A DNA stretch of 36,590 nt from NCBI RefSeq assembly GCF_001194135.2, contig NC_068988.1:83183810-83220399 (forward strand), read 5' to 3'. Below, one piece after another: positions 4,406 through 32,548 of this stretch (position 1 is its first letter; the number at the start of each line of letters is the position of its first letter). The stretch is from Octopus bimaculoides. Taxonomy: Eukaryota. Position numbers and translations under genes: made by a program. The notes beneath the pieces were generated by a model. That model searched no databases. It saw nothing but the letters and a program-made list of their open reading frames with translations, and was not told where the DNA came from.

Positions 4406-4409
4406 TGAT

Positions 4410-6270: not shown

Positions 6271-6356
6271 GTTATTGTCTGGGCCTCTGGCAGATATTCT
6301 TGCTATGTATGTATGTATATAGACACATACATATGTATGTTCACACACACACACAT

Positions 6357-6530
6357 ACAGCATCATCTTCACCATCATTTTATGTCCATTTTCCATACTG
6401 GCATGGATTGGACAAGAGTTGGCAAGCCAGAGGATTGCGCCAAGTTCTATTGTTTGCTTTGGCAGCGTTTCTAGGGTTGGATGCTCTTCCTAATGCCAAG
6501 CACTTTATAGAGTGCACTAGTGCTTTTTGC
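6357..6530 (-). mobile_element. RTE 3'-UTR / RTE-tailed SINE-like fragment
   Basis: catcatc...ccatactggcatgg...ggatgctcttcctaatgcca is shared with all RTE 3' ends in the window. Confidence 0.75.
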
Positions 6531-6758
6531 ACTATATATATATCTTTATATATATATATATATATATATATATTCTCTCCCCATTTTTTTTTCTTTCCTT
6601 TTTTTTTTTTTATTCTCTCTCTATTTTTGTCCACTCAGTCCTTTTCTGTTGAAGAGCATAGGCTTGAAACGGCAAAGACTTTTCTATTCTTCCTGAGTGT
6701 TAAACTTATACAACTGCTTGTTGTTCCCTCTCTTAGCTTCCTCTTTTGTAAATTTGAA

Positions 6759-6795
<37 letters not shown>

Positions 6796-7003
6796 ATAAA
6801 AAGTCAGGAGGTATGAGAGAAGTTGAATTGTTGGTATAAACAGGATGTTCTGGTGAACTGATAGAATTGTATAATGTGAAGCATGCATATTTATGCAAAT
6901 ATGTAAACAATAACTTATTTGACATTCAAATTATTACTATGTAAAAAAAGTCTGTGAAATGGTTGTAATCCTAAAGATGTCAAGTGTTTAAATAAATATA
7001 TTC

Positions 7004-7821
7004 GGATCTTTCTGATTTGGCGGGCGCCACTTTTTATCTATGTTTTATTTAGTGTGTTTTCTACCGAAACACTTTCAAACTTTGTATACTTGTATATTTT
7101 GTGTTATAGAACAAATGAAAATTTTTGTATTCAAAGTTATTTCATGTAGAAAATTGTCGTATTTCTGTAATTTCAACCAATCACTGACGTCTATTAAGGT
7201 GAAAACAATTACTGCTGTGGTTCGTCAACAAAACGTTGTGTGGTGTAATGGGATCTTTTCCCTCGAATAAAATTAGTGCCATTGTTTGTCAACAACAACT
7301 ATCGGCGGTACTGTTATTTATGACATCGTTCGTGCGTTTGTACTGGTTTTAGCTTTAGGGTTTTAGGGTTAGGGTTACGGTTACGGTTATGAGTATTGGC
7401 AAAAATACTCATAACCCTAACCCTAAATCTAACCCTAACCCTAAAACCCGAACCCTAACCCTAAAACCCTAAAGCTAAAACCAGTACAAACGCACGAACG
7501 ATGTCATAAATAACAGTATCACCAATAGTTGTTGTTGACAAACAATGGCACTAATTTTATTCAAGGGAAAAGATCCCATTACACCGCACAACGTTTTGTT
7601 GACAATCCATAGCAGTAATTGTTTTCACCTCAATAGACGTCAGTGATTGGTTGAAATTACTGAAATACGACAATTTTAACACGAAAAAACTTTAAAAAGA
7701 TAAAATTTTCTTAATTGCACTAAGAGTAAAAGATGTTTTATATGACATATTCTACCAGTGTCCCAAGTCTGAAAGTGTTTCGTTAAGAAAACAAGTGGCG
7801 CCCGCCAAATCAGAAAGATCC
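7004..7821. mobile_element. Non-autonomous foldback DNA transposon, Merlin-like, with a central telomere-like repeat palindrome
   Basis: Perfect 28-bp TIR starting GG (GGATCTTTCTGATTTGGCGGGCGCCACT); 8-bp TSD ATATATTC/ATATATTG (6996-7003, 7822-7829); inner arms about 95% identical (7151-7397 vs 7404-7678). Confidence 0.8.
7355..7475. repeat. Interstitial telomere-like repeats, (TTAGGG)n-like facing (CCCTAA)n-like, head-to-head
   Basis: ttagggttttagggttagggtt...taaccctaaccctaa directly visible. Confidence 0.85.
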
Positions 7822-8379
7822 ATATATTGGCCTCTTATACCTCCTGACTATGTATGCCTTATATACTTCTCATGAAATAATTTCATCAATTGGATCTTCT
7901 GGGTTTCAGCTGTATGGTTACTCTGCATTACACTTCTCTGTATTATATTACTATGTGGTCAGTTAGCCAAATCCATTAGAGGAGCTCTCTGTGATAGCCA
8001 CATGATTCTCTGAATTCATATCTTAGACTTCTACATTAAACCTTAAACACTTGTTTTTCTTTATATTCACCTGTTCCCCATGTCTTACTTTCCCATACAC
8101 TCATGCAACCTCTAACCACCCACACTTTGTTCTTCTGTCCTTTCTTTTATTCACCTCATACTTTGGGGAACACTCAGACACCTCATCACTACTATCTTTT
8201 TATCTGTTCCCAGCTCCACCCCAATCTCCTCCACACATTCTTGTAAAATATGAGCACCCAAGTAGCTTCTCTATAACAAAATACCTTTTCTGCTTTGGCC
8301 CCTTCTCTCATACTTTGACTTTTCATCTCCTGGCTTTAAGCTACTCCACTTTGGGCTCATTGCCTTGAAAGCTGCATGG

Positions 8380-8575
8380 TGACTTCACATGTGCTGGTGG
8401 CATGAAAGAGGCACCCAGTATAAGCTGTAAAACAGTTGGCATTAGGAAGGGCATTGAGCTGTAGAAATTGTAGCAAAGCAGACACTGAAGCATGATGCTG
8501 TTCTTGAATCCATTGTATCAAAATCAAACTGTCCAGTGCATGCCAGCATGGAACTTGGATATCAAATGATGCCAC
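8380..8575 (+). mobile_element. RTE 3'-UTR fragment, plus orientation
   Basis: gttggcattaggaagggcat...catgccagcatggaa...tgatg is the reverse complement of the RTE tail motif. Confidence 0.7.
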
Positions 8576-8642
8576 TGATTATGGCAGCAGCACAATGAAA
8601 TGTCATTCATCTTATCAGTAAAGCAATGTTGTATTGTTTCAG

Positions 8643-8746
8643 TGAATTACGGTAACTGGTTTGAATATATGCTCCAGTGGGAGAAGGATATCAAAGACCA
8701 TCCAGAACTACCCATTTTGATAGTTAAATATGAAGATCTTAAAAAG
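8643..8746 (+). CDS. SULT: SULT plus copy, exon 3
   Basis: 103/104 nt identical to the reverse complement of 19572-19675; AG/GT intact. Confidence 0.88.
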
Positions 8747-11700
8747 GTGAAATATCTTTTGTTTACTCAAATGTGAAATTTATTTTTGTTTTTTTGNNNN
8801 NNNNNNNNNNNNNNNNNNNNAATCTTTTATAAGGCATTTTTTGTATTTCTACAAATTATATGATAAAACTGTACTAAATTTTTTATTTTATTGATATTTG
8901 TGTGTGTTTGTGTAACTGTTTTTTTCATACTTTCTTTAGGATCCAGTGAGCAATGTGGCTAAAGTGGCTGAGTTTTTAGGCCTTCCTAAAAATGACCAAC
9001 TTTTTGAAGATATTGCTGACAAATGTTCTTTTGCTAAAATGAAGGCAGTAAAACCTCTTCTACCCGAATATTTTCGAACTCCTGGTGCATCATTGTTTCG
9101 AAAAGGTCCAATCTTTGATTTTTATTTTCACCATTTCTACAAATTATCATTGTCATTATTCAATACTTGCTTGAATCAAATGAAATTTACTGAGGCAGAT
9201 TCTCAATGGCCAGATTCCAATCCTGTTGCCAATTCACCCATTTCCATTCAAAGTAAACTTTACTATAGCCAAACGTGTTTTTCATGGAAGATTGGAAACA
9301 AACATCACTTGTATGTCAGTGACACTCATTTACATCCATCACATGATGTCAAGAAAAGGGTACTCGCAAACACACACACACACACACAATGAACCTCTTT
9401 CAGTCTCTAGCTATGATATCTACTCACAAGGCCTTCGTCCACCCAAGGTTATAGTAGAAGATGCCTGCCCAAAGTGCAACACTGTAGGACTGAACTCAAA
9501 ACTACATGGTTGAGAAGCAAGCTTCAACTAATTACGATATGGATATATATATATATATATCATCATTTTCCATCCTGGCATGGGTTGGATGGTTTGACCA
9601 GGCTGGCACACTGGAAGGCTGCACCAGACTCCAGTCTGATTTGGCATGGTTTTCTATGGCTGGATGCCCTTCCTAACACCAACCATTCCAAGAGTGTAAT
9701 GGGTGTTTTTACATGCCACTGGCACAGCTGCTATTTGTGAGCCACTTTGCTTCTGTTAAGTTCAAAGTTCGAAGATCAGGCTTCACCACCTCATTCCATG
9801 TCTTCCTGGGTCTACCTCTACCACAGGTTCCCTCCACAGTTAGAGATCAGCACTTCTCTACACAGCTGTCCTCTTTGATGTGCATCACATGACCATACCA
9901 GTGCAGTCTGTCTTGCACACCACATCTGATGCCATTTATGCCTAACTTTTCTCTCAAGATGCTTACACTCTGTTGTGTGTGCACACTAGCATTGCACATC
10001 CAGCGAAGCATACTGGCTTCATTTCTTTCAAGCCTACACATATCCTTGGCTGTCACAGCCCATGTTTCCCTGACATGCAGCATGGCTGTTCGCACACAGG
10101 CAGCAAATAATCTGCCTTTCACTCTGAGAGAGAGGCCCTTTGTTGCCAGCTGAGGTAGAAGCTCTCTGAACTTTGCCCAGCCTAATCTTATTCACACAAC
10201 AATGCTCTCGGAGCATCCACCTCCACTACTAACTTGGTCACCTAGATATCAGAAGCTATCTACTACCTCTAGCTTGCCCCCCTGGCAGTTGATGGAGTCT
10301 ATTTTCTGCACATTTTCAGCGTTTATTGTAACTGTGCGTCTTCCACATAGAAAAGCTAGTTTCCTTGTTAACCTTCCTCTGATATTGTATCCAAAGCTAA
10401 CACTTTTATGTGTCGAAAGCTTACACTGGGTGCATGATATAGAGTTTCTACCTACACCTTTTCTACAGATCGAGCAGAACCATCTACCTGAAGGGATTTG
10501 TGATTTGTCTGTCTTCCTACTTACTAAGACTTTTGTTTTTGCTAGGTTAACTCTAAGGCACTTTGATTCTAGACCTTGCTTCAATACCTGAAACTTCTCT
10601 AGTTCAGATAGTGATTCAACTATAAGAGCAAGGTCATCAGCATAGTGGAGCTCCCAGGGGCAGCCTGTCTTGAATTCCTCTGTTATTGCCTGGAGGACTA
10701 TGATGAACAAGTGGGGGATGAGCACTGAACCTTAGCGAACCCCTACTTGTAATCTGAATTCTATGCTGTACTCATTGGCAACCCTTGCCTTACTGGTAGC
10801 ATCCCTGTGCATAGCTTGTACAGCTCTCACCAACCACTTGTCTATCCCTAGTTTCCACATTGAACACCAGATAAGCGATTAGGGGATCCAGTCAAAGGCT
10901 TTCTCTAAGTCAACAAAGGCCAAGTACAGAAGTTTATCTTTGGCTATGTATTTCTCCTGCAGCTGCCTTACCAGAAATATAGCATCAGTGGTACTTATCC
11001 CTGGCACAAAACCAAACTGCATCTCATCTAGACTAACTCTCTTCCTAATTAGCTGGGCTATGACTCTCCCTGTGACTTTCATCACCTGATCCAACAATTT
11101 GACACCTCTGTAATCATTTCTATCCAGAGCATCACCTTTATTTTGTGGCAGTTGACTATGGTGCTGCTACACCAGTCATTGGGTATGACTTCTTTGTGAA
11201 CCACCTGATTTACAATACAGGTGACTAGACCATAACCCACATCACAAGATATTTTAAGCATCTCATTAGTGATTCCTGATGGGTTGAGGGCTGTTCCTGT
11301 CATCATATCCTTAATTGCTTTATCTACCATGGAACTGCCGATTTGGGTAGCCAGTCGCTCAATTGGGTCAACATTTGGCAGACTCTCCTACTCCCAGTCA
11401 TTTTCTATGTTCAGCAGTCTTTCATAATGGCATTTCCAAGCCTCTTTCTTTGCAGAATCATTACATGCAAGTGCACCATCATCCATGCAGACACATTTTT
11501 ATCCTATGACATCATGATTTTCTCTCATGCACTGTTTTGCGATCTGAAACACTCTCCACCTTACCCCTTGGATGCAACATGTATCAACATGCCTCTGTTC
11601 AAGCATCTCAACAATCTCGCTATACCTACCTTTCAATGTGCCTTCATTGATAATGCCAACTCTGAAAACTGGGAAAGGGATGGGAAGGAGTAATGTTATT

Positions 11701-12653
11701 CGGAACCTGAAAGTAAGGTTTTCATAATCATTTGATAACAGACATGTTACATAAGTTGTTCTCTTGCTTTAACCTATCATCATTCAAGCCAGTTAAAGAT
11801 TGTTGCCCCTATGTTGGGGGAGTGGGAGGAGTGCAATGTAAGCGTTGTAAATATAAATGTTTTGAGCATTGTAAATATAAGCGTTACTGCTGCAAATATA
11901 ATAGGTCAGTGTTAAAGTTAAGTAAATGAGCTGCTATTGGTTAGTCCTTACGTATAGACAGAGAGAGGTAGGTGGTTTGAAGGAATGGAGGTATGCAAGT
12001 TTTCTGGTACAGAAGTGAGGCAGAGCCCTGTCGGCATTTCTGGTATAAGAGAAGAGATTTCCAGTATTGGTGGTGGGGTTGGGCATGGGTGGGCGCATTG
12101 CAAACAAGCAATATCACGAACAAGCAATGGCCAGCATCACCACATACAGGAGATAGAGAGAGAGAGATAGCAATAAGGGACTTGAGGCCTTTTGCAAAGC
12201 AAGGATCATAGCAAAGTATGGAAACACGAGGGGTATGTATGACAATGTGAAAAGTTATTGAAAAATTTAAAGAATTATAAGCAACGTCCAGTATTGCCAC
12301 ACAGAAGAGATATAAAGTGAGATAGCAGTAAGGAACTTGAGGCCTTTAGTGAGGGGAGGATCATAGCAAAGTATGGAAACATGAGGGGTATGTAATATGA
12401 TTTGTAAAAGTTACTAAAAAATTTAAAGAATTATAAGCCACTAAAGTTATTTTAACTGAAAATACACATGTAAGCATGTTAGTATTACAAGTTAGATAAA
12501 AGAATGATGAGTGATTAAAAGCTAGAGAAATTTCCTAAACTTAGCTAGGCATTTTGTGTGGTATGATAGAATCAACATACAGCAGAGCAGGGATGTGAAA
12601 CTTCAGAGGACTGGAGGATTCTTTAAATAGTTTACAACCGGAGGACAGGAGGG

Positions 12654-12691
<38 letters not shown>

Positions 12692-12729
12692 NNNNNNNNN
12701 NNNNNNNNNNNNNNNNNNNNNNNNNNNNN

Positions 12730-12778
<49 letters not shown>

Positions 12779-14089
12779 TTAACAAAGGTACGTACCTGTA
12801 TATTTACACTTTTCTAGAAGTGACATGAAAACAATATATAAGTTTAGTTTATTGTATTTAATTCATTCTATTAAATTGCCTTAAACCATATTTTAACATC
12901 TCCTATCTATAGGTGGTTATATGTGAAGATGAAAGGTCAATCTTTTTCTTCATTTGATTTAAGAAGTGTATTATAACTTTTGTTTATATTAACTTAAACC
13001 AAATACCAGGCCAGATTCCCTGCAGTTTTTGTTCTGGCTTGAAATTTTGTGTTCAAATCCCATTGTAGCCCACTTGGGTGGTAGACTTAAGCCATTGCTC
13101 AGTGTAATATCAGCACTAGTTTTCCTGTTTGACAATAGCTTTTTCCCTCCCTCTTCTAAGCTTCAGAGACCCTATAAAGGTCATGGGCACAGCCTCCTCT
13201 TTTGAGTAACAGATAAAAGAAAAAACCCATATATTTGCACTTTTTTAAATGTATGAATGTAATTAGCACCAGCAGAATACACGGCTTATTTCAATATATT
13301 AATTAATTAACTCTGTTAATACATTTCCCTAAATCTTATCACTTCTAGTCTGGAGATGGTTATATGTATGCATGAAATGCCAGTCTTCCTTGTCCTCTTT
13401 AACATAGGAAATGTATTATAACCTCTGTCTATATTAACTAAATCTCTCAGTAACAACAATTCAACATTAGACCAGATACCTTGTGTTATTTGATTCTGCT
13501 CTTTGCATTCTCAGTTCAAATCCCATCATAGCCTACCATCTTCCATCTCCCCTTTCTCCAAGTTTCAGAGGCACTTAAAGCATCAAATGTTCTACCTTCC
13601 CTCCTAGCTAGACTGAAACTGTGTAGAAACCAGTTTGATGAATTGTACCTGTAATCCCATGGTACAGTTTTGTCACACACAATGTCACATTGATTCTGCC
13701 TGATAATTACATTAATGGTACATGTGTCTGTGGAATACTCAGTCACTTTTACATTAATTCAATGAGTAAGCAATTCAGTTGATTGAACAGTTGAATCCGT
13801 AGTATAAAACACCAATAGAGAATCATCAATTCATCCAGCTGTTTTGCATTGACCACATCACAGTATTTAATGTTACTCTGATTGGCAACTGATTTCATAT
13901 TAGAGAAGGTATATAAAAGACAGCTTCTACTTATTATAGACATGAAATTCTTACAGCCAAAGTATCTTCTATTTTACAGGTGTTGTTGGAGACTGGAAGA
14001 ATTGGTTCACAGTTTCTCAAGAGGAAAGATTCCAAGTGGAATGTGACAAATTTGACAAAACGTCCACGTTGTTTAGTACAAAGTACTAA
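8643..14089 (+). CDS. SULT: Second SULT paralog, 3' part only (exons 3-5: 8643-8746, 8940-9105, 13980-14089); exons 1-2 not in window
   Basis: Exon sizes (104/166/110) and phases match the minus copy, frame is intact, and no exon-2 homolog was found in 1-8642. Confidence 0.85.
8940..9105 (+). CDS. SULT: SULT plus copy, exon 4 (DPVSNV...GASLFRK-G)
   Basis: ORF 8946..; acceptor CTTTAG; weak donor GTCCAA. Confidence 0.88.
9385..9520 (-). mobile_element. tRNA/CORE-type SINE 5' half
   Basis: The reverse complement matches 26345-26485 (gttcagtcc B-box, gggcag..tcttctactataacc). Confidence 0.7.
9556..11690 (-). mobile_element. RTE (BovB-like) LINE, 5'-truncated and decayed, in intron 4 of the plus SULT
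   Basis: RT motifs QFGFVPG..TTDAIF, AFVDLEKAFD, ELHYADDL, LRVNLAKTK, RLHWYGHV; 3' tail next to (TA)n. Confidence 0.93.
12163..12440. repeat. Direct repeat of about 122 bp, 2 copies, period about 157
   Basis: gagatagca.taagg.acttgaggcctt...ggatcatagcaaagtatggaaaca.gaggggtatgta...aaatttaaagaattataagc occurs twice. Confidence 0.85.
13980..14089 (+). CDS. SULT: SULT plus copy, last exon (VVGDWKNWFTVSQEE...STKY*)
   Basis: Acceptor TTTTACAG, intact frame and TAA stop; 7 nt differ from the minus copy. Confidence 0.88.
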
Positions 14090-15185: not shown

Positions 15186-15424
15186 TTGTGGTGTGCAAGA
15201 GAGACGATATAAATAATATAATTTTAGAATTGAAAAATAAAATAATTTCAATGATTTATTGTTGAAATAATGTGATGTTTATTTTCTTTTTTTATTTGTG
15301 AACTTGAGTTTTGTTTCCTAAAAAATATTTTTTCATTCTTTTTAAGGTGATTAATTATGGATATGTAGTGACCTTACCTATGTGTGTGTGTGTGTGGGAG
15401 GTATATGTGTATATGTGTGTATTA

Positions 15425-17449: not shown

Positions 17450-17494
<45 letters not shown>

Positions 17495-17602
17495 NNNNNN
17501 NNNNNNNNNNNNNNNNNNNNNNNNNNNNNNNNNNNNNNNNNNNNNNNNNNNNNNNNNNNNNNNNNNNNNNNNNNNNNNNNNNNNNNNNNNNNNNTTTTAA
17601 AA

Positions 17603-17939: not shown

Positions 17940-18049
17940 TTAGTACTTTGTACTAAACAACGTAGATTGCTTGTCAAATTTGTCACATTCCACTTGGAAT
18001 CTTTCATTTTGAGAAACTGTGAACCAATTCTTCCAGTCTCCAACAACAC
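17940..18049 (-). CDS. SULT: SULT minus copy, last coding exon (VVGDWKNWFTVSQNE...STKY*)
   Basis: Acceptor TTTTACAG; GDWKNWFTVSQNE motif; TAA stop. Confidence 0.92.
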
Positions 18050-19193: not shown

Positions 19194-21960
19194 CATCATC
19201 ATTATCATCATAATGAAAATATAAATCAAAGATTGTACCTTTACGGAGAAATGATTCACTAGGAGTTCGAAAAAATTCAGGGTGCGGAAGTTTTGCAGCC
19301 TTCATTTTGTCAAAAGTACATTTGTCAGCAATATCTTCAAAAAGTTGGTCATTTTTAGGAAGGCCTAAAAACTCAGCCACTTTAGCCACGTTGCTCACTG
19401 GATCCTAAAGTAAATTTGAAAAAAACATTACACATGCATACACTATAAACTATCAGCAAAGTAACTATTTTAGTATGGTTTTAACATATAAGTTGTAGAA
19501 ATATACATACATACATACACTATGAAACAGCAAAATAAATTTCAGTTTTGAGTAAACAAAAGATATTTCACCTTTTTAAGGTCTTCATATTTAACTATCA
19601 AAATGGGTAGTTCTGGATGGTCTTTGATATCCTTCTCCCACTGGAGCATATATTCAAACCAGTTACCGTAATTCACTGAAACAATACAACATAGATTTTC
19701 AGTGAGTGTGACTGTATGTGTACTTATTCATCTATGTGTGAGGATATNNNNNNNNNNNNNNNNNNNNNNNNNNNNNNNNNNNNNNNNNNNNNNNNNNNNN
19801 NNNNNNNNNNNNNNNNNNNNNNNNNNNNNNNNNNNNNNNNNNNNNNNNNNNNNNNNNNNNNNNNNNNNNNNNNNNNNNNNNNNNNNNNNNNNNNNNNNNN
19901 NNNNNNNNNNNNNNNNNNNNNNNNNNNNNNNNNNNNNNNNNNNNNNNNNNNNNNNNNNNNNNNNNNNNNNNNNNNNNNNNNNNNNNNNNNNNNNNNNNNN
20001 NNNNNNNNNNNNNNNNNNNNNNNNNNNNNNNNNNNNNNNNNNNNNNNNNNNNNNNNNNNNNNNNNNNNNNNNNNNNNNNNNNNNNNNNNNNNNNNNNNNN
20101 NNNNNNNNNNNNNNNNNNNNNNNNNNNNNNNNNNNNNNNNNNNNNNNNNNNNNNNNNNNNNNNNNNNNNNNNNNNNNNNNNNNNNNNNNNNNNNNNNNNN
20201 NNNNNNNNNNNNNNNNNNNNNNNNNNNNNNNNNNNNNNNNNNNNNNNNNNNNNNNNNNNNNNNNNNNNNNNNNNNNNNNNNNNNNNNNNNNNNNNNNNNN
20301 NNNNNNNNNNNNNNNNNNNNNNNNNNNNNNNNNNNNNNNNNNNNNNNNNNNNNNNNNNCGCCAGTAAGGTGACGCTGGTAACGATCACACTCAAATGGTG
20401 CTATTTACATGCCACCAGCACGGAAGCCAGACAGCTGCTCTGGCAATGATCATGCTCGGACGGTGCTGTTAGTGCTCCACTGGCACAGGTGCCAGTCATC
20501 GAATTTGGTTCAGTATTTCTGTGTATTTGCCTGTTAGTGTACAAGTTAATCTGTTTCTGTATGAATATATTATCTGTGCCTGTATGTCTTTATATTTTGC
20601 CTCTTCTTTTTAAATTTTGCCAACCCTTTATTCCTATTCTATATAAACTGACTTTGCTTTACTTTGAGAAAATACTTAAGCATTGAAACCATTTTACCAT
20701 TGTCAAGTATTTATTTATTTATATAAATTTTATTCACTCACTCTTTCTTGTATTGAGCCTGTTTCTTTTGGTTATTGTCTTCTCAGATATAATTCATAAA
20801 CCAATCATTATAATTCATTCACTCCTTTCTCAAACGTGTCCTTTTAACTATATCTCAAATATGCAGAAACAATATTTAGACATTTCCAGGAAGAATAATG
20901 CCATTCCAAATGGACAAGTTTATCACAGAAAGACACTGACTTCATTAAACATTAAACAAATTAAATGATGAAACTACATCCTGTAAACTCTTTTCAGAAA
21001 CGAAACTTTAAGGATGAGTTATATAAGTTAGTTTAATGCATTATATGGGGGGAAACAGTCTTTTCCACCAAGATCTACACAAGACCAAAGATATATAGAA
21101 TTCTAAGGCGATTCATATTCATTCAAATAAAACAGTTAATTATTGCCATCTTGATTTTTAAAAATCATACCATCCATTTATCTGTGATACATTAACTAAA
21201 GATCACAAAAAACTAGACTAGAACTTAATAAATTTGACAGGATCAACTACCAGAACATAAAAAGAACAACCAAACTACATGTTAGAAACCATACCTAACT
21301 CTTGGTTATAAATTGATATGTCATAAAACTCATTTTAACAAAAACCCTTCTATTTGCCTGATTAACTCTTCTAAATATATTATTTGTCACCTTCACAAGA
21401 TTATATTAGACAGGATTCTCAAAACCTTCAACTGAAACTTTGGGAAAATATCCAGGCTGTAATTCACTGTTTTAACTTTTTCCTTCATAAAAACTGTATT
21501 ACATTCATTCGGTTTAATGTATATAAGCACTATATCTCAATTCAAGCTGTGTTATGCAATAAAACTATGGAATTTGTAAAATCCTTTTTCACATATTTAA
21601 CTGTCAAATACTGATATTATTTTATTAACTACAAAAACAGTAATTAACTTGGAATATTTTCTTTGGGTTAGAAAAGCTTCTCAAATGCCTTTGAACATTA
21701 GCATAAGAGTTACTGATTTAGCAGGGCGTCTAGATATTGTGGGGGGGGGGCGACCTGCTAGGAAGGATATGTAGCACTCAATACAGGACCCCACCAACTC
21801 CCAGAAATCTTGGCATTAAGAGGCTATCTTTCAATATACAAAGGTATCTTGACTTAAAAAATGGATTCTCTTTTATGCTAGCCACTTTAGAGACACCAAA
21901 TAATTCAATGTAGTTGATGGAAAAGGGAATCAACAGAACACTCCTGAAAATGTATGTATA

Positions 21961-27229: not shown

Positions 27230-30200
27230 CATTGCTATAACCCTATCTAGGTTGATGGATGAATCTGCATTTGTGGATGGAACTAATAGTCAAGTTTCTT
27301 GCCTCATTGTGTATGCTAAAGATCTTAGACAATTAAGCTGATTAGTCAGCTCATCATTAATGAAGAACAAAGAAATCTACAGGAATTGAGATAAACAATG
27401 ATGATAATAATGATGACGATGATGATGATGGTGGTGGTGGTATTGGTGGCGGTGATAGTTTTGGTGGTGGTGGTGGTTTTGGTGGTGATTAACAAAATAA
27501 GCTTATCTTCAGAAAATTTTTTTAAATGATTGAGAAAAAGATTATACTCACATTTACCATCAAAAAACAACTCAAAGAAGCCATTCCAATCGCCATCATA
27601 TTGATACAGTAACTTAAGCTGAAATGTGTGATGGTAGGCAGAGGTGGCAATATCACGTGGGTTGCGTGTCATGAAAATCATTTTAGTTTTTTTGGTAAAT
27701 ATCTCTCTAGGTAAATGATGCAAGAACAGGTGGTTGTTTAGAACTCTGGGTGATGGAAGCTGGTCTAGTTGGTCTTGGTCCATCAATTCCATCATTGCAA
27801 CACTCTTGTGTTCTGGATTATATTCAGCAGAACCATTAACTAACATTCCAGCAATTTCCCACATCCAATGACAACCTATGTTGAAAAGATTGAAATCTCA
27901 AGAATAGAATGAAAACACCAAATCATATTATTATATCATCATCATCATTTAATGTCCATTGCCCATGCTGGCATGAGTTGGATGGTTTGACTGGGTTGGC
28001 ATGCTGTAAGGCTGCACCAGGCTCCAGTCTGATTTGGCATGGTTTTCTAGGGTTGGATGCCCTTCCTAATGCCAACCACTCTGAGAGTGTAATCGTTGCT
28101 TTTATGTTCCACTGGCATGGGTGCCATTTGTGTGACACCGGGATGTGTTTACATGCCACCGACATGGGTGCCAATTTGCATGACATCAGTATCTTCCACG
28201 ACTGTGATTTTGCTCAGCTTGATGGGTCTTTTTCTCAAGTATGACATAACGCCAAAGGTCTTGGTCAATGCCTCCATGAGGCCCAACACTCAAAAGGAAC
28301 TCAGCCACTTTGCCTCTGTGAGGCCCAACATTCAAAAGATGTTCTTTACATGCTACCAGCACAGGTGCACTTGGCTTGGCGGGTTCTCTCAAGCACATTG
28401 CCTCTGCGAGGCTAAAAGTTCGAAGATCATGCTTCACCACCTTGTCCCATGTCTTCCTAGGTCTACCTCTACAACAGGTTCCCTCCACAGTTAGAGATCA
28501 GCACATCTTTACACAGTTGTCCTCATCCATATGCATCACATGACCATACCAGTGCAGTCGTCTATCTTGCACATCACATCTGATTCTTCTTATACCTAAC
28601 TTTTCTCTCAAGATGCTTACTCTGTTGAACATGCACACTGACATTGCACATCCACCAAAGTATACTGGCTTCATTTCTTTCAAGCCTACACATGTCCTTG
28701 GCTTTCATAGCCCATGTTTCACTGCCATGCAGCATAGCTGTTCACACACAGGCATCAAACAATCTGCCTCTCATTCTGACAGAGGCCCTTTGTTGCCAGC
28801 AGGGTTAGGAGCTCTCTGCGCTTTGCCCAGCCTTATCTTATTCTTACAGCTATGCTCTCAGAGTATCCACTTCCACTACGAACTTGGTCAAATAGATAAC
28901 TACCTTTAGCTTGCACCCCAACCACCAGCAGTTGATGGAGTCTATTTTCTGTGCATTTTCAGCATTTACTGTATCTGTGCACCTTCCACATACAAAAGTT
29001 CGTTTCCCTGTTAACCTTCCTCTGATGTTGCTGCACCTTTCATGTGTCCAAAGCTTACATCTTATGGAGTTTCTACCTACAACTTTTCTACAGATTGAGC
29101 AGGGCCATCTACCTGAAGGGATTTGTGATTTGTCTGCCTTCCTACTTACTATGACTTGGGTTTTTGCTAGGTTAACTCTAAGGCACTTTGATTCTAGACC
29201 TTGCTTCCATACTTGGAACTTCTCTAGTTCAGGTAGTGATTCAACTATAAGAGCAAGGTCATCAGCATAGAGGAGCTCCCAGGGGCAGCCTGTCTTGAAT
29301 TCCTCTGTTATNNNNNNNNNNNNNNNNNNNNNNNNNNNNNNNNNNNNNNNNNNNNNNNNNNNNNNNNNNNNNNNNNNNNNNNNNNNNNNNNNNNNNNNNN
29401 NNNNNNNNNNNNNNNNNNNNNNNNNNNNNNNNNNNNNNNNNNNNNNNNNNNNNNNNNNNNNNNNNNNNNNNNNNNNNNNNNNNNNNNNNNNNNNNNNNNN
29501 NNNNNNNNNNNNNNNNNNNNNNNNNNNNNNNNNNNNNNNNNNNNNNNNNNNNNNNNNNNNNNNNNNNNNNNNNNNNNNNNNNNNNNNNNNNNNNNNNNNN
29601 NNNNNNNNNNNNNNNNNNNNNNNNNNNNNNNNNNNNNNNNNNNNNNNNNNNNNNNNNNNNNNNNNNNNNNNNNNNNNNNNNNNNNNNNNNNNNACCAGAT
29701 AAGGGATTAGGGGATCCAGTCAAAGGCTTTCTCTAAGTCAACAAAGGCCAAGTACAGAAGTTTATCTTTGGCTATGTATTTCTCCTGCAGCTGTCTTACC
29801 AGAAATATAGCATCAGTGGTACTTATCCCTGGCACAAAACCAAACTGCATCTCATCTAGACTAACTCTCTTCCTAATTAGCTGGGCTATGACTCTCCCCG
29901 TGACTTTCATCACCTGATCCAACAATTTGATACCTCTGTAATTATTTCCATCTAAGGCATCACCTTTACCTTTGTAGCAGTTGACTATGGTGCTGCTACA
30001 CTATTCATTGGGTATGACTCCTTCATGAGCTACCTGCTTTACAATATGGGTGACTAGACCATAACCCACACTGCCAGATATTTTAAGCATCTCAGCAGTG
30101 ATTCCTGATGGACCAGGGGCTTTCCCTGTTCTCATTTCCTTAATTGCTTTATCTACCATGGAACTGCCAATTTGGGTAGCCAGTCCCTCAATTGGGTCAA

Positions 30201-32548
30201 CATTTAGCAGGCTCTCCTCCTCCCATTCATTCTCTACATTCAGCAGCCTTTCATAATGGCATATCCAAGCCTCTTTCTTTGCAGAATCACTAAATGCAAG
30301 TGCACTATCATCCATGCGGACACATTTCCCTCCTATGACATCACAATTTTCAGTCACAAACTGTCTTGCAATTCAAAATACTTCAATTCTTTGGTCCTCA
30401 TAACACTACCATTACAAATGCTTTTGCATATTATTGAGAAATTTACAGAGAGCAAAACAAAGCTTCTTCTAAGCAAACAACTCTAGACATGTTTTTTAAA
30501 AAGAAATCTATAAGTTTGTCTATGAGAGCTTGTGAATCAGTGATTGCATCTACAAGTCATGGTGTGTGTGTGAGTCTAGTGCATCTAAAAGTGATTTAGA
30601 AAATGATTATAATAATAATGTTTTTTACTATAAAAGACAGCAAGCTGGCAGAAACGTTAGCATGCTGGGCGAAATGCTTAGCGGTATTTCGTCTGTCTTT
30701 ACGTTCTGAGTACAAATTCTGCCAAGCTCGACTTTGCCTTTCAACCTTTTGGGGTCGATAAATTAAGTAGTAGCTGCATACTGGGTTGATCTAATCGACT
30801 GTCCCCACCTCTCTAAAAATTTTAGGCCTTGTGCCTAGAGTAGAGAAGAATATTTTTTACTATAAATGATCTTGACATTTTCATTACTTTATGAGTATTA
30901 TAAATTTTATAGGTAAAATATTTTTCTGTGAATGATTTATAAAATTGCTCCTATGGGAAATTATTGCTCTGCTTTATGAATTTTCACTTTATGAGCAGTC
31001 TCCAGGCACAAATTAACTTGTCTATCAAGGCATTACTGTATACATATATACATATCATCATCCTCATTACCGTTTAATGTCTGCCTTCCATGCAAGCATG
31101 GTTTGGACAGTTTGACTGAGGACTGGCAAGCCAGGAGGCTGCACCAGGCTCCAGTCTGATCTGGCAAGGTTTCTACAGCTGGATGCCCTTCCTAATGCCA
31201 ACCACTCCTAGAGTGTAGTGGGTGCTCTTTATGTGCTACCAGCATGGGAGCCAGTCAGGTGGCACTGGCATCAACCATGCTCAAACGGTGCTTTTTATGT
31301 GCCACCAGCACAGGAGCCAGTCAGGCAGCACTGGCATAGATCACATTCAAATGGTTCTTTTTACATGCCACCAGCATGGGTGCCAGTTAGGCGGCACTAG
31401 CATTGGTCACGACTACAATTTCACTTGACTCAACACATCTTTTCAAGCACGGCATATTGCCCGACAGTTGAAAGGTACTTTTAAATGGACCAGTTATGTG
31501 ACACTGGCATCAGCCATAGCTACGATTCTCACTTGACTCACTGGGTCTTCTCAATCACAGCATATCTCCAAAGATCTCCGTTGCTTGTCATTGCCTCTGT
31601 GAGGCCCAGCATTTGAAGGTCGTGCTTCACCACCTCATCACATCTTTCTAGGTCTACCACTTCCACAGGCTCCTTCCACTGTTATGGTGTAACATTTCTT
31701 CACACAGCTATCTTCATCCATACACAACATATAACCATGCCAGCGCAGTCATCTCTCTCACACACCACATTTGATGCTTCTTATGTCCAACTTTTCTCTC
31801 AGGGTGCTTACAATCTATCGTGTATGCACACTGACATTACACATCCAGCGGAGCATACTAGCTTCATTTCTTTGAAGCCTATGCATGTCCTCAGCAGTCA
31901 CAGCCCATGTTTCACTGCCGTGTAGCATGGCTGTTCACACACATGCATCATACAGTCTACCTTTCACTCTAAGCGAGGGGCCCTTTGTTACCAGTATGGG
32001 TAGGAGCTCCCTGAACTTTGCCTAGGCTATTCTTATTCTAGCAGCTACACTCTTAGAGCATCCACCTCCGCTACTGACTTGCTCACCTAGTTAATGGAAG
32101 TTATCAACTATTTCTGGTTTTTCCCCCTGGCATGTAATGGAATCTGTTTTCTATACATCTTCAGTATGCATTGCCCCTGTGCATCTGCCACACACAAAAA
32201 CTATTTTCCCATTTAACCTTCCTTTGATATTGCTGCACCTCTTATGTGTTCATAGCTTACGTTGGGTACATCTTATGGAGTTTCTACCTATGCCTGAGAG
32301 CTGTGATAATAGCAGAAATAGTTGACTAAAGAAAGAAACACGTATGATTGTGGGATGTCCTTCTTGATAAAAGAATACCTACCAGCTTTAAAATAGCCTA
32401 GAAGTAAAACATCATCATCTCTTACTGGCATGTCTGGAAGTCTGTCCATATTTTCTTGAATATTTGGAAATGATGGCACCAAAAATTCATTGTAATCATA
32501 GCTGAGTAATTGACATCCAGCAGAATCTTTGTAGCAAACTTCAGGCAT
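17940..32548 (-). CDS. SULT: Cytosolic sulfotransferase (SULT1-like), complete 5-coding-exon gene, join(32548-32383,27875-27552,19675-19572,19404-19239,18049-17940), 289 aa
   Basis: Manually spliced with GT-AG introns and consistent phases (1,1,0,1); 870 nt open frame. Motifs: 5'-PSB loop GYFKAGCHW, catalytic His in LNNHL, 3'-PB RNPRDIATSAYHH, YEDLKKDP, RKGVVGDWKNWFTVSQNE. Confidence 0.93.
18690..18925 (+). mobile_element. RTE-tail-related repeat ending in (GAT)n/(ATT)n
   Basis: aagaagggcat..gctataag..aacccatcc..catggaaaa..gatgatg resembles the RTE 3' tail. Confidence 0.5.
18926..19158. mobile_element. Unclassified insertion of about 230 bp between (ATT)n and (AAT)n
   Basis: Higher-GC block bounded by trinucleotide repeats, with no counterpart in the paralogous intron 4. 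Confidence 0.35.
19239..19404 (-). CDS. SULT: SULT minus copy, coding exon 4 (DPVSNV...SESFLRK-G)
   Basis: Acceptor CTTTAG, donor GTACAA, 166 nt; ends at the RKG motif. Confidence 0.92.
19572..19675 (-). CDS. SULT: SULT minus copy, coding exon 3 (LNYGNWFEY...YEDLKK)
   Basis: Acceptor TTTCAG, donor GTGAAA, 104 nt; YGNWFEY and YEDLKK SULT motifs. Confidence 0.92.
20359..20495 (-). mobile_element. RTE 3'UTR tandem-repeat fragment
   Basis: atggtgct..tttacatgccaccagcac..gccag..ctggca unit, as in 31221-31420. Confidence 0.7.
22050..22480 (-). mobile_element. R4/Dong-type non-LTR retrotransposon fragment
   Basis: Reverse translation ..KIMTEFRMHHPESDIERLYIQRIEDGRGLIQLE..WQEKP; homologous to 36190-36590. 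Confidence 0.8.
22630..22858 (-). mobile_element. Possible helentron-associated (HINE/DINE-like) element end
   Basis: The reverse complement begins AACAAGAG next to a (TAA)-rich site; class inferred from the terminus only. Confidence 0.3.
22879..23208. repeat. Palindrome of about 330 bp, two inverted Penelope-type terminal repeats
   Basis: Arms 22879-23042 and 23056-23208 are about 90% reverse-complementary, with a 13-nt spacer. Confidence 0.85.
23097..23134 (+). ncRNA. Minimal type-I hammerhead-ribozyme-like motif (variant or degenerate core)
   Basis: TCTTT-CTGTGGA-A-GAGC(GTAG)GCTC-GAAA-C-ATT-AAAGA: stem I 5 bp, stem II 4 bp, loopless stem III; core A6 is replaced by U. Confidence 0.5.
23580..23930 (+). 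mobile_element. L1/Tx1-clade LINE RT fragment
   Basis: SVCQGC..PLLYVL (for QGCPLSP) and YSDDIIIIVSD..AKINQK motifs. Confidence 0.7.
23958..24838 (+). mobile_element. Chapaev3 (CMC) DNA transposon 3' part with right TIR
   Basis: PPLHIKLGL..F.GPQI..VKNFL.NH..MHFLHSHLDFFPANFGAVSD.GE..NLMGDCCW; ends AAATTTGTTGCCTAGTG followed by TAA (CAC...GTG termini, TWA TSD). Confidence 0.85.
26326..27120 (+). mobile_element. Full-length tRNA-derived CORE-type SINE with internal microsatellite (gap inside)
   Basis: A-box ggagtggctgtgtgg, B-box gggttcagtccc, CORE-like ggcacct..ggcaagtgtctt; 3' half shared with 34550-34738. Confidence 0.85.
27395..27490. repeat. (GAT)n/(GGT)n compound trinucleotide repeat in SULT intron 2
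   Basis: Directly visible. Confidence 0.85.
27552..27875 (-). CDS. SULT: SULT minus copy, coding exon 2 (CHWMWEI...FFDGK)
   Basis: Acceptor CATAG, donor GTGAGT, 324 nt; contains PSPRVLNNHL and RNPRDIATSAYHH. Confidence 0.93.
27935..30370 (-). mobile_element. RTE LINE, 5'-truncated, in intron 1 of the minus SULT (gap inside)
   Basis: ORFs 29707..29925 (AFVDLEKAFD), 30001..30357 (GKAPGPSGITAEMLK) and 28498..28683 (RLHWYGHV). Confidence 0.93.
30645..30850 (+). mobile_element. Nin-domain-like tRNA SINE
   Basis: gctggcagaaacgttagc head; gcctttcaacctttt.ggggtcgataaattaagta core; homologous to 17640-17795. Confidence 0.7.
31055..32290 (-). mobile_element. RTE LINE 3' fragment with 3x66-bp tandem repeat in the 3'UTR
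   Basis: RT C-terminal homology to 9760-10460; repeat units start at 31221, 31287 and 31353. Confidence 0.88.
32383..32548 (-). CDS. SULT: SULT minus copy, coding exon 1 (MPEVCYK...DDDVLLLGYFKA-G)
   Basis: ORF 32288..32548; donor G|GTAGGT after GYFKA; VRDDDVLLLGY is typical of the SULT N-terminus. Confidence 0.9.

What the first reader, a model, noticed from the sequence alone, without database searches (positions are those of the whole stretch)
9027..9105. Paralog divergence is concentrated in the SULT substrate-gating cap (loop 3)
Seen: the last 26 codons of exon 4 carry 18 nt and 11 amino-acid differences (plus SFAKMKAVKPLLPEYFRTPGASLFRK vs minus TFDKMKAAKLPHPEFFRTPSESFLRK at 19317-19239). 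The preceding 63 shared codons have no amino-acid differences. Known: in cytosolic SULTs the segment just before RKGxxGDW is loop 3, which caps the acceptor pocket and shapes specificity. Inference: this block escapes conversion or is diversified, giving two enzymes with one scaffold but different acceptor specificity (xenobiotics, amines, steroids). This is the most biologically suggestive signal in the window.
Basis: partly seen in the sequence, partly recalled or inferred. Interest (0 to 1): 0.8.

Follow-up and report, generated by a model that had tools for sequence, protein, structure and literature searches.

The report
Gene-conversion edge at octopus sulfotransferase cap loop
Two neighbouring octopus sulfotransferase genes look identical right up to the flexible loop that caps the substrate pocket because recent gene conversion erased their differences upstream of it and stopped at the loop, a familiar mosaic in clustered enzyme genes and not a sign of fresh adaptive change.

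Summary
Plus 9027-9104 and minus 19317-19240 differ at 18 nt and 11 of 26 aa. The preceding 63 codons differ at 2 synonymous sites only.

The window is Octopus bimaculoides chr CM046608.1. It holds exons 3-5 of a 'sulfotransferase 6B1' gene (plus) and a complete 5-exon paralog (minus, XP_014784698.1). The block maps to SULT Loop 3, the active-site cap.

The block is not unusually diverged. Its 23% nt divergence is no higher than unconverted introns (25-31%), and dN/dS is 0.46.

The unusual part is the flank. Exon 3 and the first 87 nt of exon 4 were homogenised by short gene-conversion tracts. A third O. bimaculoides paralog shares them. Two of the matching O. sinensis/O. vulgaris paralogs were homogenised independently.

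All the tract edges fall at 9027-9055, the 5' edge of the loop. Each loop type is kept in its O. sinensis ortholog (2 and 6 aa changes).

Over the full length the two proteins differ at 41 residues, 28 of them in exons 1-2. 'One scaffold, different cap' is therefore overstated. 'Escapes conversion' is supported. Positive selection and different substrate specificity remain unshown.

This is a known kind of mosaic and of modest interest.

The parts
9027..9105 (+). Loop-3 (active-site cap) block at the 3' end of exon 4 of the plus gene (O. bimaculoides 'sulfotransferase 6B1', XP_052826179). It consists of 26 codons plus the first base of the Gly codon of RKG.
   Evidence: Translation. Alignment to SULT1B1/1C2 structures. 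It differs by 2 aa and 3 nt from the O. sinensis ortholog.
19239..19317 (-). Loop-3 block of the minus gene (XP_014784698.1).
   Evidence: Translation. It differs by 18 nt and 11 aa from the plus block. Its closest loop is that of O. sinensis XP_029640360 / O. vulgaris CAI9726724.
8643..8746 (+). Exon 3 of the plus gene.
   Evidence: The splice model reproduces RefSeq protein P0126. It has 1 nt difference from minus exon 3.
8940..9105 (+). Exon 4 of the plus gene: E4a 8940-9026 plus the loop block 9027-9105.
13980..14089 (+). Exon 5 of the plus gene (GVVGDW... to the stop codon).
32383..32548 (-). Exon 1 of the minus gene (ATG at 32548).
   Evidence: The protein is identical to P0124.
27552..27875 (-). 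Exon 2 of the minus gene. It carries the PSB loop remainder, the catalytic His, RNPRD, and the loop 1 and loop 2 regions.
19572..19675 (-). Exon 3 of the minus gene.
19239..19404 (-). Exon 4 of the minus gene.
17940..18049 (-). Exon 5 of the minus gene, including the stop codon.
8626..8771 (+). Conversion tract 1: exon 3 plus 17 nt and 25 nt of flanking intron. It has 1 mismatch (8737) to minus 19692-19547. Copy-specific, orthology-following sequence resumes at 8625 and 8772.
   Evidence: The longest plus=minus run covers 14 variable sites (8631-8704) between mismatches at 8625 and 8737, permutation P = 0.00015. The tract as drawn extends this run across the single mismatch at 8737 and was not tested as a whole. 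Shared-derived synonymous site 8704.
8934..9026 (+). Conversion tract 2 (E4a). It has 1 mismatch (8954) to minus 19410-19318. The minus copy carries G1-type derived Ser (DPVS) and Glu (LFED).
   Evidence: In O. sinensis the corresponding paralogs differ at 6 nt and 3 aa here.
19301..20662 (-). Stretch of the minus gene (intron 2 3' part, exon 3, intron 3, E4a and the first 17 nt of the loop block) that is 96-100% identical to the third paralog P0128 about 70 kb away. It is interrupted by the N gap 19748-20358. Identity collapses at the position equivalent to plus 9044.
17495..17594 (.). Assembly gap of 100 N between the 3' ends of the two genes. Collinearity with the O. sinensis locus stops here.

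Best explanation
The window carries two members of a clustered, cephalopod-specific family of cytosolic sulfotransferases in Octopus bimaculoides. The plus gene belongs to orthology group G1 (O. sinensis XP_036361208). The minus gene belongs to G2 (O. sinensis XP_029640360). The duplication predates the split of O. bimaculoides from O. sinensis/O. vulgaris.

Since that split, short interlocus gene-conversion tracts have overwritten exon 3 with its immediate intron flanks and the first 87 nt of exon 4. These tracts involve the plus gene, the minus gene and a third paralog (G3, XP_014783124). That is why 63 codons are identical even at synonymous sites.

The tracts end at 9027-9055. The last 26 codons of exon 4 and intron 4 lie beyond that edge. 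They keep the old, paralog-specific sequence, so they show the true age of the duplicates.

Those 26 codons encode SULT Loop 3, the flexible cap over the acceptor and PAPS sites. The loop tolerates change more than the rest of the fold (omega about 0.45-0.8 versus 0.2-0.3). It is one of the three variable substrate-loop regions of the family.

Shown: the gene models, the orthology, the conversion tracts and their edges, the mapping to Loop 3, and the absence of omega > 1.

Inferred: tracts stop at the loop because its dense mismatches and indels block heteroduplex extension, because homogenised loops are selected against, or both. Also inferred: the two loop types give different acceptor preferences.
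For: Identity of the locus. The minus model equals XP_014784698.1, and the plus exons 3-5 equal the C-terminus of XP_052826179. The window maps to CM046608.1.

Family membership. PF00685 scores 198.6 bits. PDB SULT1B1/1C2/1A1 match at E = 1e-41 to 1e-39. The AlphaFold model of the ortholog has pLDDT 94.6 and TM 0.81-0.84 to SULT1 structures.

Orthology. Window 2933-17494 is collinear with the O. sinensis P0002 locus at 89-93%. Intron site patterns follow orthology at 20:0:0, 14:1:1 and 43:3:1.

Conversion.
- Plus versus minus shows E3 1/104 and E4a 1/87, against intron divergence of 25-31%.
- dS of E3+E4a is 0.06, against 0.30-0.36 in E1/E2 (P = 0.007).
- The run-length permutation test gives P = 0.00015.
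- The shared-derived synonymous site 8704, and the derived Ser and Glu in the minus E4a, point the same way.
- In O. sinensis the same paralogs differ by 11 nt (E3) and 6 nt (E4a).

Recurrence.
- Ob_minus versus Ob_P0128 shows 1/70, 1/104, 6/167 and 0/87, then 11/75 and 17/60.
- Os_P0121 versus Ov_geneA shows 2/70, 4/104, 2/164 and 2/87, then 19/78 and 19/60.
- Orthologs differ by about 8% in intron 3.
- The switch points are 9027, 9044 and 9034-9055.

The loop is old and not hot.
- Loop divergence of 18/78 is not above intron divergence of 109/381 (P = 0.40).
- Omega is 0.46.
- Plus versus its ortholog shows 2 aa and 3 nt differences. Minus versus its ortholog shows 6 aa differences.

Family variability. 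The three most variable windows are residues 67-92, 226-253 and 139-164.
Against: - The direction of tract 1 (minus-type into plus) rests on few sites.
- The E4a tract alone is not significant in the run test, because one mismatch breaks the run. It rests on shared-derived states and on the contrast with O. sinensis.
- Exon 3 and E4a are also under strong purifying selection in all paralogs, so part of their identity is constraint and not conversion.
- With 26 codons, omega = 0.46 cannot be distinguished statistically from 1 (P = 0.1-0.3). A few positively selected sites inside the loop cannot be excluded.
- The O. bimaculoides assembly has gaps 25 nt and 56 nt from tract 1, so an assembly contribution there cannot be fully excluded.
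Confidence: 0.78

Rival explanations
1. Positive, diversifying selection drove rapid amino-acid change in Loop 3 after duplication and created two enzymes with new acceptor specificities.
For: - Amino-acid differences are 4-fold enriched in the loop relative to the unconverted exons: 11/26 versus 30/198 (P = 0.002).
- Five of the 11 differences lie in the N-terminal half of the loop, which overlays the acceptor site.
- Group-specific residues (S/T, A/D, V/A, LL versus PH) are kept in the orthologs.
- Loop omega is higher than elsewhere.
Against: - Omega is 0.43-0.82 in all nine pairs tested and never exceeds 1.
- Synonymous divergence in the loop is also the highest of any exon segment (dS 0.49).
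- The N:S ratio equals that of the other exons (P = 0.59).
- Nucleotide divergence does not exceed that of the introns.
- The sharp left edge coincides with conversion-tract ends, not with a structural boundary. The first 9 codons of the block are helix and are mostly conserved.
Confidence: 0.15
2. One copy, for example the plus copy whose 5' exons are absent from the window, is a decaying partial duplicate or pseudogene, and the loop differences are neutral drift.
For: No exon 1 or exon 2 of the plus copy lies in the window. Loop divergence is close to the neutral intron level.
Against: - Exons 1-2 exist 3-8 kb upstream of the window.
- The full ORF is intact with canonical splice sites and is annotated with three RefSeq isoforms.
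- Omega against the O. sinensis ortholog is below 1 in every segment except exon 2 (1.57).
- The plus loop has changed at only 2 of 26 residues since the species split, while introns changed by 7-10%.
- Drift would not spare the other 99 codons.
Confidence: 0.04
3. The identity of the 63 upstream codons is an assembly artefact. Short-read collapse or gap filling copied one paralog's exon 3/E4a into the other, which makes the loop look like a hot spot.
For: The assembly is short-read based, with N gaps 25 nt downstream of tract 1 in the plus copy and 56 nt upstream of it in the minus copy. The placement of the minus gene differs from O. sinensis, and the difference begins exactly at an N gap.
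Against: - Each tract is embedded without gaps in copy-specific sequence on both sides.
- Single copy-specific mismatches (8737, 8954) persist inside the tracts.
- The same pattern, with the same edge, is seen between G2 and G3 in the gap-free O. sinensis and O. vulgaris loci.
- A third O. bimaculoides copy about 70 kb away shares the tracts.
Confidence: 0.03

Closest known systems
Vertebrate cytosolic sulfotransferases (SULT1 family; e.g. human SULT1B1 3CKL/2Z5F, SULT1C2 2AD1, SULT1A1 1LS6) and their Loop 3 / active-site cap
   Same: - Same Pfam domain and same fold (TM 0.81-0.84).
- Conserved catalytic Lys and His, the 3'-phosphate Arg/Ser, RKGxxGDW, and the KxxxTVxxxE dimer motif.
- The variable block aligns to SULT1B1 229-259, overlapping Loop 3 (235-263). 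The N-terminal half of that loop overlays the acceptor and the C-terminal half overlays PAPS.
   Different: - Only about 30% identical.
- The loop is 5 residues shorter.
- The PSB loop reads K[AS]GCHW instead of KSGTTW, and 'NNH' replaces 'KTH'.
- The NCBI names '1B1' and '6B1' are similarity labels. The family is a cephalopod-specific cluster, not an ortholog of either.
- Substrates are unknown.
Hominoid SULT1A expansion (SULT1A1/1A2/1A3/1A4; Bradley & Benner 2005, PMC555591)
   Same: Clustered recent SULT duplicates on one chromosome. After duplication, changes at a few substrate-site positions are thought to alter acceptor preference (dopamine sulfonation).
   Different: In that case positive selection at specific sites was inferred (per the paper's abstract). 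Here omega stays below 1, and the striking pattern comes from conversion of the flanks.
Concerted evolution with islands of divergence in duplicated genes (e.g. primate L/M opsins; theory of Teshima & Innan).
   Same: Interlocus gene conversion homogenises most of the aligned sequence, introns included. A short segment carrying function-determining residues stays paralog-specific, and tract edges recur at its border.
   Different: In the opsin case the protected sites have demonstrated functional effects. Here the functional difference between the loops is only inferred. A purely mechanical barrier from mismatch density and indels explains the edge equally well.

Membership tests
Cytosolic sulfotransferase (Pfam PF00685 Sulfotransfer_1) | Domain match above the curated threshold | tested here: met
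   The minus protein scores 198.6 bits (cut-off 22). The plus exon 3-5 fragment scores 92.1 bits.
Cytosolic sulfotransferase (Pfam PF00685 Sulfotransfer_1) | 5'-phosphosulfate-binding loop PKSGTTW with catalytic Lys | tested here: inconclusive
   K54, G56 and W59 are conserved, but the loop reads FKAGCHW with TT replaced by CH. The molluscan consensus is PKSGTHW. The core residues are present and the motif is non-canonical.
Cytosolic sulfotransferase (Pfam PF00685 Sulfotransfer_1) | Catalytic His (His108 of SULT1A1) and the 3'-phosphate binders (Arg130, Ser138, RKGxxGDW) | tested here: met
   H104, R126, S134, R252-K253-G254 and G257-D258-W259 are invariant or nearly invariant in a 62-sequence alignment. 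Both window copies read RKGVVGDW.
Cytosolic sulfotransferase (Pfam PF00685 Sulfotransfer_1) | SULT fold | tested here: met
   The AlphaFold2 model of the O. sinensis ortholog of the plus gene has pLDDT 94.6. Foldseek gives TM 0.80-0.84 to SULT1B1, 1D1, 1A1, 1E1 and 1C2. The window proteins themselves could not be submitted.
Cytosolic sulfotransferase (Pfam PF00685 Sulfotransfer_1) | PAPS-dependent sulfonation activity | not testable with these tools
   This needs recombinant enzyme assays.
SULT Loop 3 / active-site cap | Position: the segment between the helix after the 'TSF' adenine contact and RKGxxGDW (SULT1B1 aa 235-263) | tested here: met
   HMMER alignment maps the 26 codons to SULT1B1 S229-K259. 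Nine of the 11 variable residues fall within 235-259.
SULT Loop 3 / active-site cap | Flexible, non-regular structure over the active site | tested here: met
   In the model, residues 244-265 are coil, and pLDDT of 82-88 is the lowest apart from the N-terminal residues 1-10. Contacts with an acceptor could not be measured because no coordinates or ligand were available.
SULT Loop 3 / active-site cap | Determines acceptor selectivity | not testable with these tools
   This is a literature-based expectation only (PMC4492763).
Interlocus gene conversion (concerted evolution) with an unconverted island | Paralogs within a species are more alike than orthologs between species inside the tract, while the flanks follow orthology | tested here: met
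   For example, in intron 3 Ob_minus versus Ob_P0128 is 6/167 and Os_P0121 versus geneA is 2/164, while orthologs are 13/161. The last 400 nt of intron 4 follow orthology.
Interlocus gene conversion (concerted evolution) with an unconverted island | Abrupt tract boundaries, statistically longer identical runs than expected, and shared-derived states | tested here: met
   The run test gives P = 0.00015. Boundaries are 8625/8626, 8771/8772 and 9026/9027, with 9044 and 9034-9055 in the other pairs. The clean shared-derived synonymous site is 8704 (CCA in the three O. bimaculoides copies, CCT or CCG elsewhere). At 8650 the O. sinensis G2 ortholog also carries C, so that site is not specific to O. 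bimaculoides. Derived Ser and Glu occur in the minus E4a.
Interlocus gene conversion (concerted evolution) with an unconverted island | The island is maintained by selection and not by a mechanical barrier | tested here: inconclusive
   Three independent tract ends fall within 28 bp. Each loop type is conserved in its ortholog. Omega below 1 and dense mismatches and indels in the loop core fit either cause.
Positively selected (diversifying) specificity loop | dN/dS > 1, or nonsynonymous excess relative to neutral sites | tested here: not met
   Loop omega is 0.46 for plus versus minus and 0.43-0.82 in eight other pairs. The N:S ratio is not different from the other exons.

The most novel reading that the evidence does not exclude
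Loop 3 of these octopus sulfotransferases is a selection-protected specificity module inside a gene cluster that is otherwise being homogenised. On this reading, conversion tracts in at least three independent events, in two octopus lineages, stop within the same 28 bp because alleles with a homogenised cap are purged. The cluster would then keep several acceptor specificities on a shared, concertedly evolving catalytic core.
Probability: 0.3. Interest if true: 0.45.

Novelty: new member of a known kind. Interest (0 to 1): 0.3.

Why it matters
The result changes what the signal means. A reader who sees '0 of 63 versus 11 of 26' would infer a burst of adaptive change in the substrate cap. The data show instead that the cold flank is the recent event and the loop merely shows the duplicates' true age.

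For cephalopod biology, it documents a clustered SULT family evolving by frequent short gene conversion. The family has at least 4 groups in Octopus and relatives in Argonauta and squids, including a Watasenia sulfotransferase. It also shows that the three substrate-loop regions are where the paralogs stay different, so these are the residues to target in specificity experiments.

For annotation, orthology calls and dN/dS scans in this cluster will mislead unless they are made segment by segment.

Tried and rejected
- I searched the window for plus-copy exons 1-2 by tblastn with human SULT1A1 and with Octopus proteins, and by self-blastn. None were found. They were later located upstream of the window in L005.
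- My first exon 2 donor (27558) was wrong. It was corrected to 27552 after seeing 'DGKLNYG' in the homologs.
- I first treated O. vulgaris 'gene A' as the ortholog of the minus gene. Cluster members then showed that the true ortholog is XP_029640360/CAI9726724, and that gene A is the ortholog of a third O. bimaculoides paralog. The four-taxon counts still hold, but the gene A 'singletons' are partly paralog differences.
- The blastn figure of 84-86% intron identity understated the neutral paralog divergence. It covers only the alignable parts and includes exons. Global alignment gives 25-31%.
- P0001 and P0126 were not on record as gene products.
- An Rfam scan of the window found nothing.
- A simple pseudogene reading and an assembly-collapse reading were considered and rejected. 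See the rival explanations.
Full report
**1. What is at the coordinates**

Plus 9027-9104 translates to SFAKMKAVKPLLPEYFRTPGASLFRK. Minus 19317-19240 translates to TFDKMKAAKLPHPEFFRTPSESFLRK. Base 9105/19239 is the first base of the Gly codon of RKG, which is split by intron 4.

I built gene models from the sequence. I then checked them by requiring GT-AG splice sites and exact reproduction of RefSeq proteins.

- The minus gene is complete: E1 32548-32383, E2 27875-27552, E3 19675-19572, E4 19404-19239, E5 18049-17940. Its 289-aa product is identical to XP_014784698.1 of Octopus bimaculoides.
- The plus gene has only E3 8643-8746, E4 8940-9105 and E5 13980-14089 in the window. These equal the C-terminal 125 residues of O. 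bimaculoides 'sulfotransferase 6B1' isoforms (XP_052826179 and others).
- The window is CM046608.1, about 83.184-83.220 Mb, of GCA_001194135.2.
- The plus gene's exons 1 and 2 lie 8.3 kb and 3.2 kb upstream of window position 1.

**2. The observation**

Over the 125 shared codons there are 27 nt and 13 aa differences.

| Segment | nt differences | aa differences |
|---|---|---|
| First 63 codons | 2 (8737, 8954; both synonymous) | 0 |
| Next 26 codons (the block) | 18 | 11 |
| Exon 5 | 7 | 2 |

Finding 11 of 13 differences in 26 of 125 codons has P = 2.5e-7.

**3. What the proteins are**

Both are cytosolic sulfotransferases.

- PF00685 scores 198.6 bits (minus) and 92.1 bits (plus fragment).
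- The best solved relatives are human SULT1B1, 1C2, 1A1 and 1A3, at E = 1e-41 to 1e-39.
- An AlphaFold2 model of the O. sinensis ortholog of the plus gene has mean pLDDT 94.6. It superposes on SULT1 structures with TM 0.80-0.84.
- The catalytic Lys and His, Arg126/Ser134, RKGVVGDW and the KxxxTVxxxE motif are present.
- The PSB loop is non-canonical (K[AS]GCHW).

The 26-codon block aligns to SULT1B1 S229-K259 and is 5 residues shorter. Loop 3 is defined there as aa 235-263. Its N-terminal half lies over the acceptor site, its C-terminal half lies over PAPS, and R258 contacts the 3'-phosphate (PMC4492763).

In the model the block's first 8 residues are helix. The rest is coil, with the lowest confidence of the fold apart from the N-terminal residues (pLDDT 82-88).

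Nine of the 11 variable positions fall in Loop 3. Five lie in the acceptor half (V/A, P/L, L/P, L/H, Y/F) and four in the PAPS half (G/S, A/E, L/F, F/L).

**4. Relatives and orthology**

The protein search found a cephalopod-specific clade. It includes O. vulgaris, O. sinensis, Argonauta hians, a squid transcript and a Watasenia scintillans sulfotransferase. Other molluscs are at most 44% identical.

With cluster members and their loci four Octopus orthology groups emerge.

| Group | O. bimaculoides | O. sinensis | O. vulgaris |
|---|---|---|---|
| G1 | plus gene | XP_036361208 (locus L001) | - |
| G2 | minus gene | XP_029640360 (L007) | CAI9726724 |
| G3 | XP_014783124 (L004, about 70 kb away) | - | 'gene A' (L003) |
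| G4 | XP_014780678 | XP_029640190 (L002) | 'gene B' |

- Window 2933-17494 is collinear with the O. sinensis G1 locus at 89-93% identity.
- Intron site patterns group plus with the O. sinensis G1 gene, and minus with the G2/G3 type. Counts for orthology: species-wise: other are 20:0:0, 14:1:1 and 43:3:1 in three intron segments.
- The duplication is therefore older than the species split.
- Each loop type already exists in the other species. The plus loop differs from its ortholog at 2 aa (3 nt). The minus loop differs from its ortholog at 6 aa (8 nt).

**5. Is the block hot, or is the flank cold?**

Raw plus-minus divergence in unconverted non-coding sequence:

| Segment | Differences | Percent |
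|---|---|---|
| Intron 3, 3' part | 28/113 | 25% |
| Start of intron 4 | 9/36 | 25% |
| Next part of intron 4 | 72/232 | 31% |
| 3' UTR | 49/160 | 31% |
| Last 280 nt of intron 4 | 43/275 | 16% |

The block's 18/78 (23%) is not above the combined intron figure of 109/381 (P = 0.40).

Nei-Gojobori estimates for the block are dN 0.222 and dS 0.486, giving omega 0.46. In eight other paralog or ortholog pairs, loop omega is 0.43-0.82 and never exceeds 1. The ratio of nonsynonymous to synonymous changes in the loop (11.5:6.5) does not differ from that in exons 1, 2 and 5 (35.5:28.5; P = 0.59).

By contrast, exon 3 and E4a show 1/104 and 1/87 differences. Their dS is 0.06, against 0.30-0.36 in exons 1-2 (P = 0.007). 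The anomaly is the flank.

**6. Gene conversion**

*Tract 1.*
- From 8626 to 8771 (exon 3 plus 17 and 25 nt of intron) the two copies differ at one site.
- At 8625 and 8772 the sequences revert abruptly to the orthology pattern.
- A permutation test on runs of concordant variable sites gives P = 0.00015.
- At 8704 all three O. bimaculoides copies share A, while the O. sinensis and O. vulgaris copies have T or G.
- At 8650 the three O. bimaculoides copies share C, but so does the O. sinensis G2 ortholog, so that site is not diagnostic.

*Tract 2.*
- From about 8934 to 9026 (E4a) the copies differ at one site.
- The minus copy carries Ser (DPVS) and Glu (LFED). These are derived states of G1. 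Its own relatives (O. sinensis/O. vulgaris G2 and G3) keep the family-wide Gly and Lys.
- The direction here is therefore plus-type into minus-type.
- In O. sinensis the corresponding G1 and G2 genes differ by 11 nt/3 aa in exon 3 and 6 nt/3 aa in E4a. The homogenisation is therefore specific to the O. bimaculoides lineage.

*The third paralog and the other lineage*:

| Pair | Intron 2 end | E3 | Intron 3 | E4a | Loop | Intron 4 start |
|---|---|---|---|---|---|---|
| Ob_minus vs Ob_P0128 (G2 vs G3) | 1/70 | 1/104 | 6/167 | 0/87 | 11/75 | 17/60 |
| Os_P0121 vs Ov_geneA (G2 vs G3) | 2/70 | 4/104 | 2/164 | 2/87 | 19/78 | 19/60 |

- The Ob_minus/Ob_P0128 tract extends about 1 kb into intron 2.
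- Orthologs differ by about 8% in intron 3, more than the within-species paralog pairs do.
- G2 and G3 were therefore homogenised independently in the O. sinensis/O. vulgaris lineage.

*Edges.*
- The switch points are 9027 (plus/minus), 9044 (minus/P0128) and 9034-9055 (O. sinensis/O. vulgaris G2/G3).
- All lie within 28 bp, at the 5' edge of the hypervariable loop core.
- Downstream, the last 400 nt of intron 4 follow orthology. Exon 5 is simply conserved in all paralogs.
- The only coding sequence inside the unconverted island is the Loop 3 block.

**7. How concentrated is the divergence over the full length?**

Using the full-length O. bimaculoides proteins, plus and minus differ at 41 of 289 residues.

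| Segment | aa differences |
|---|---|
| E1 | 11/55 |
| E2 | 17/108 |
| E3 | 0/34 |
| E4a | 0/28 |
| Loop 3 | 11/26 |
| E5 | 2/35 |

- Loop 3 has the highest density: 42% against 15% in the unconverted exons (odds ratio 4.1, P = 0.002).
- It holds only 27% of the differences.
- Across nine cephalopod sequences, the three most variable 26-residue windows are residues 67-92, 226-253 and 139-164. By alignment to SULT1B1 and my own reading of the SULT literature, these correspond to the loop 1, loop 3 and loop 2 regions (loop 1 is aa 85-92 in SULT1B1).
- Among Octopus paralogs, loop 3 ranks first.
- 'One scaffold with two caps' is therefore overstated. The paralogs also differ in the other substrate-loop regions.

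**8. Mechanism and what remains inferred**

Shown:
- The duplication is old.
- Short conversion tracts are recent and recurrent.
- The tract edges lie at the loop.
- Each loop type is retained across species.
- Constraint in the loop is relaxed, but omega stays below 1.

Inferred: the reason the tracts stop at the loop. The loop core has dense mismatches and one-codon indels (P0128, G4). These should abort heteroduplex extension, which makes the island self-maintaining. Alternatively or additionally, alleles with a homogenised cap are removed by selection. Three independent edges within 28 bp, together with the cross-species conservation of each loop type, lean towards some selective maintenance. 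They do not prove it.

Also inferred: the loops confer different acceptor preferences. This rests only on the role of Loop 3 in vertebrate SULTs.

**9. Comparison with the known, and novelty**

These are ordinary members of the cytosolic SULT superfamily, belonging to a cephalopod-specific cluster. Variable substrate loops among SULT paralogs, and post-duplication change at substrate-site residues, are known (for example hominoid SULT1A, PMC555591). Concerted evolution with unconverted islands is a classic pattern in tandem gene families.

I found no paper on this octopus cluster. This is a new instance of a known kind. Interest is modest. The recurrent tract edge at the cap loop is the most notable part.

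**10. Caveats**

- The O. bimaculoides sequence has gaps close to tract 1.
- The convergent placement of the two genes rests on a 100-N gap and disagrees with O. sinensis. There the G2 gene lies 32 kb upstream of G1 on the same strand.
- Counts in a 26-codon block are small.
- No expression or enzymatic data were available.

Noticed in passing
window 17495-17594 and flanks: Collinearity with the O. sinensis G1 locus ends exactly at this 100-N gap, which is flanked by (TA)n and (TAT)n. In O. bimaculoides the minus gene lies 3.85 kb downstream of the plus gene and is convergent with it. In O. sinensis its ortholog lies 32 kb upstream on the same strand. This is either a real rearrangement or a scaffold placement or orientation error.
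   Followed up: partly
window 7004-7821: An 818-bp foldback/MITE-like insertion lies in intron 2 of the plus gene. It has perfect terminal inverted repeats of at least 29 bp (GGATCTTTCTGATTTGGCGGGCGCCAC), an apparent target-site duplication of about ATATATT, and a telomere-like (CCCTAA)n core at 7412-7472. The site is empty in O. sinensis (L001 about 39054). A related copy lies elsewhere in L001.
   Followed up: partly
L005 22723-23046 (plus gene exon 2, upstream of the window) versus L001 22159-22482: Exon 2 of the plus gene differs from its O. sinensis ortholog at 19 aa, with about 20 nonsynonymous and 3 synonymous changes (omega 1.57). The plus gene shares the stretch PKEIFTKKSKMIFMTRNPRDIAASA with the third O. 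bimaculoides paralog. This suggests another conversion patch and not positive selection.
   Followed up: partly
L003 10001-19699 and 44083-62190 (O. vulgaris): The annotated O. vulgaris protein P0003 is a chimera of exons 1-2 of gene A and exons 3-5 of gene B, which lies about 24 kb downstream. The O. vulgaris G1 model P0123 (245 aa) skips exon 4 and runs out of frame.
   Followed up: partly
L007 18477-18642 (O. sinensis G2 exon 4): The O. sinensis ortholog of the minus gene reads RNG instead of the nearly invariant RKG (AAC for AAA). This changes a conserved residue (Lys259 of SULT1B1; my reading: a PAPS contact). O. vulgaris keeps RKG. It may be a sequencing error or an impaired allele.
   Followed up: no
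minus gene exons 1/2 junction (window 32383/27875) and all cephalopod homologs: The PSB loop is K[AS]GCHW in place of the canonical KSGTTW, and 'NNH' replaces 'KTH' before the catalytic His. Both are conserved across cephalopods.
   Followed up: no
window 20514-20662 (minus strand, intron 2 of the minus gene): A 150-nt A-rich intronic piece is 96.7% identical to O. vulgaris gene A intron 2 and 98% identical to the third O. bimaculoides paralog. This is above the roughly 90% intron norm. A SINE-like sequence (20359-20510) lies next to it, abutting the N gap. There is no Rfam hit.
   Followed up: partly
window 4682-5020(-), 10249-10725(-), 30001-30357(-); repeats 9560-11550, 28394-30400, 31500-32290: Reverse-transcriptase-like ORF fragments and several copies of dispersed repeats (75-91% identity) fill the introns and the intergenic space.
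   Followed up: no
protein P0009 (Watasenia scintillans A0A3T0XDC1): A firefly-squid sulfotransferase belongs to the same cephalopod clade (56% identity). Watasenia luciferin is coelenterazine disulfate, so members of this clade are candidates for luciferin sulfation. The link was not examined here.
   Followed up: no
Argonauta hians P0005 versus P0007: The two Argonauta paralogs are identical in exon 3 (0/35 aa) and nearly identical in exon 5 (1/36). They differ at 12/28 in E4a and 18/26 in loop 3. This suggests a similar mosaic with a different tract edge in that lineage (protein level only).
   Followed up: no
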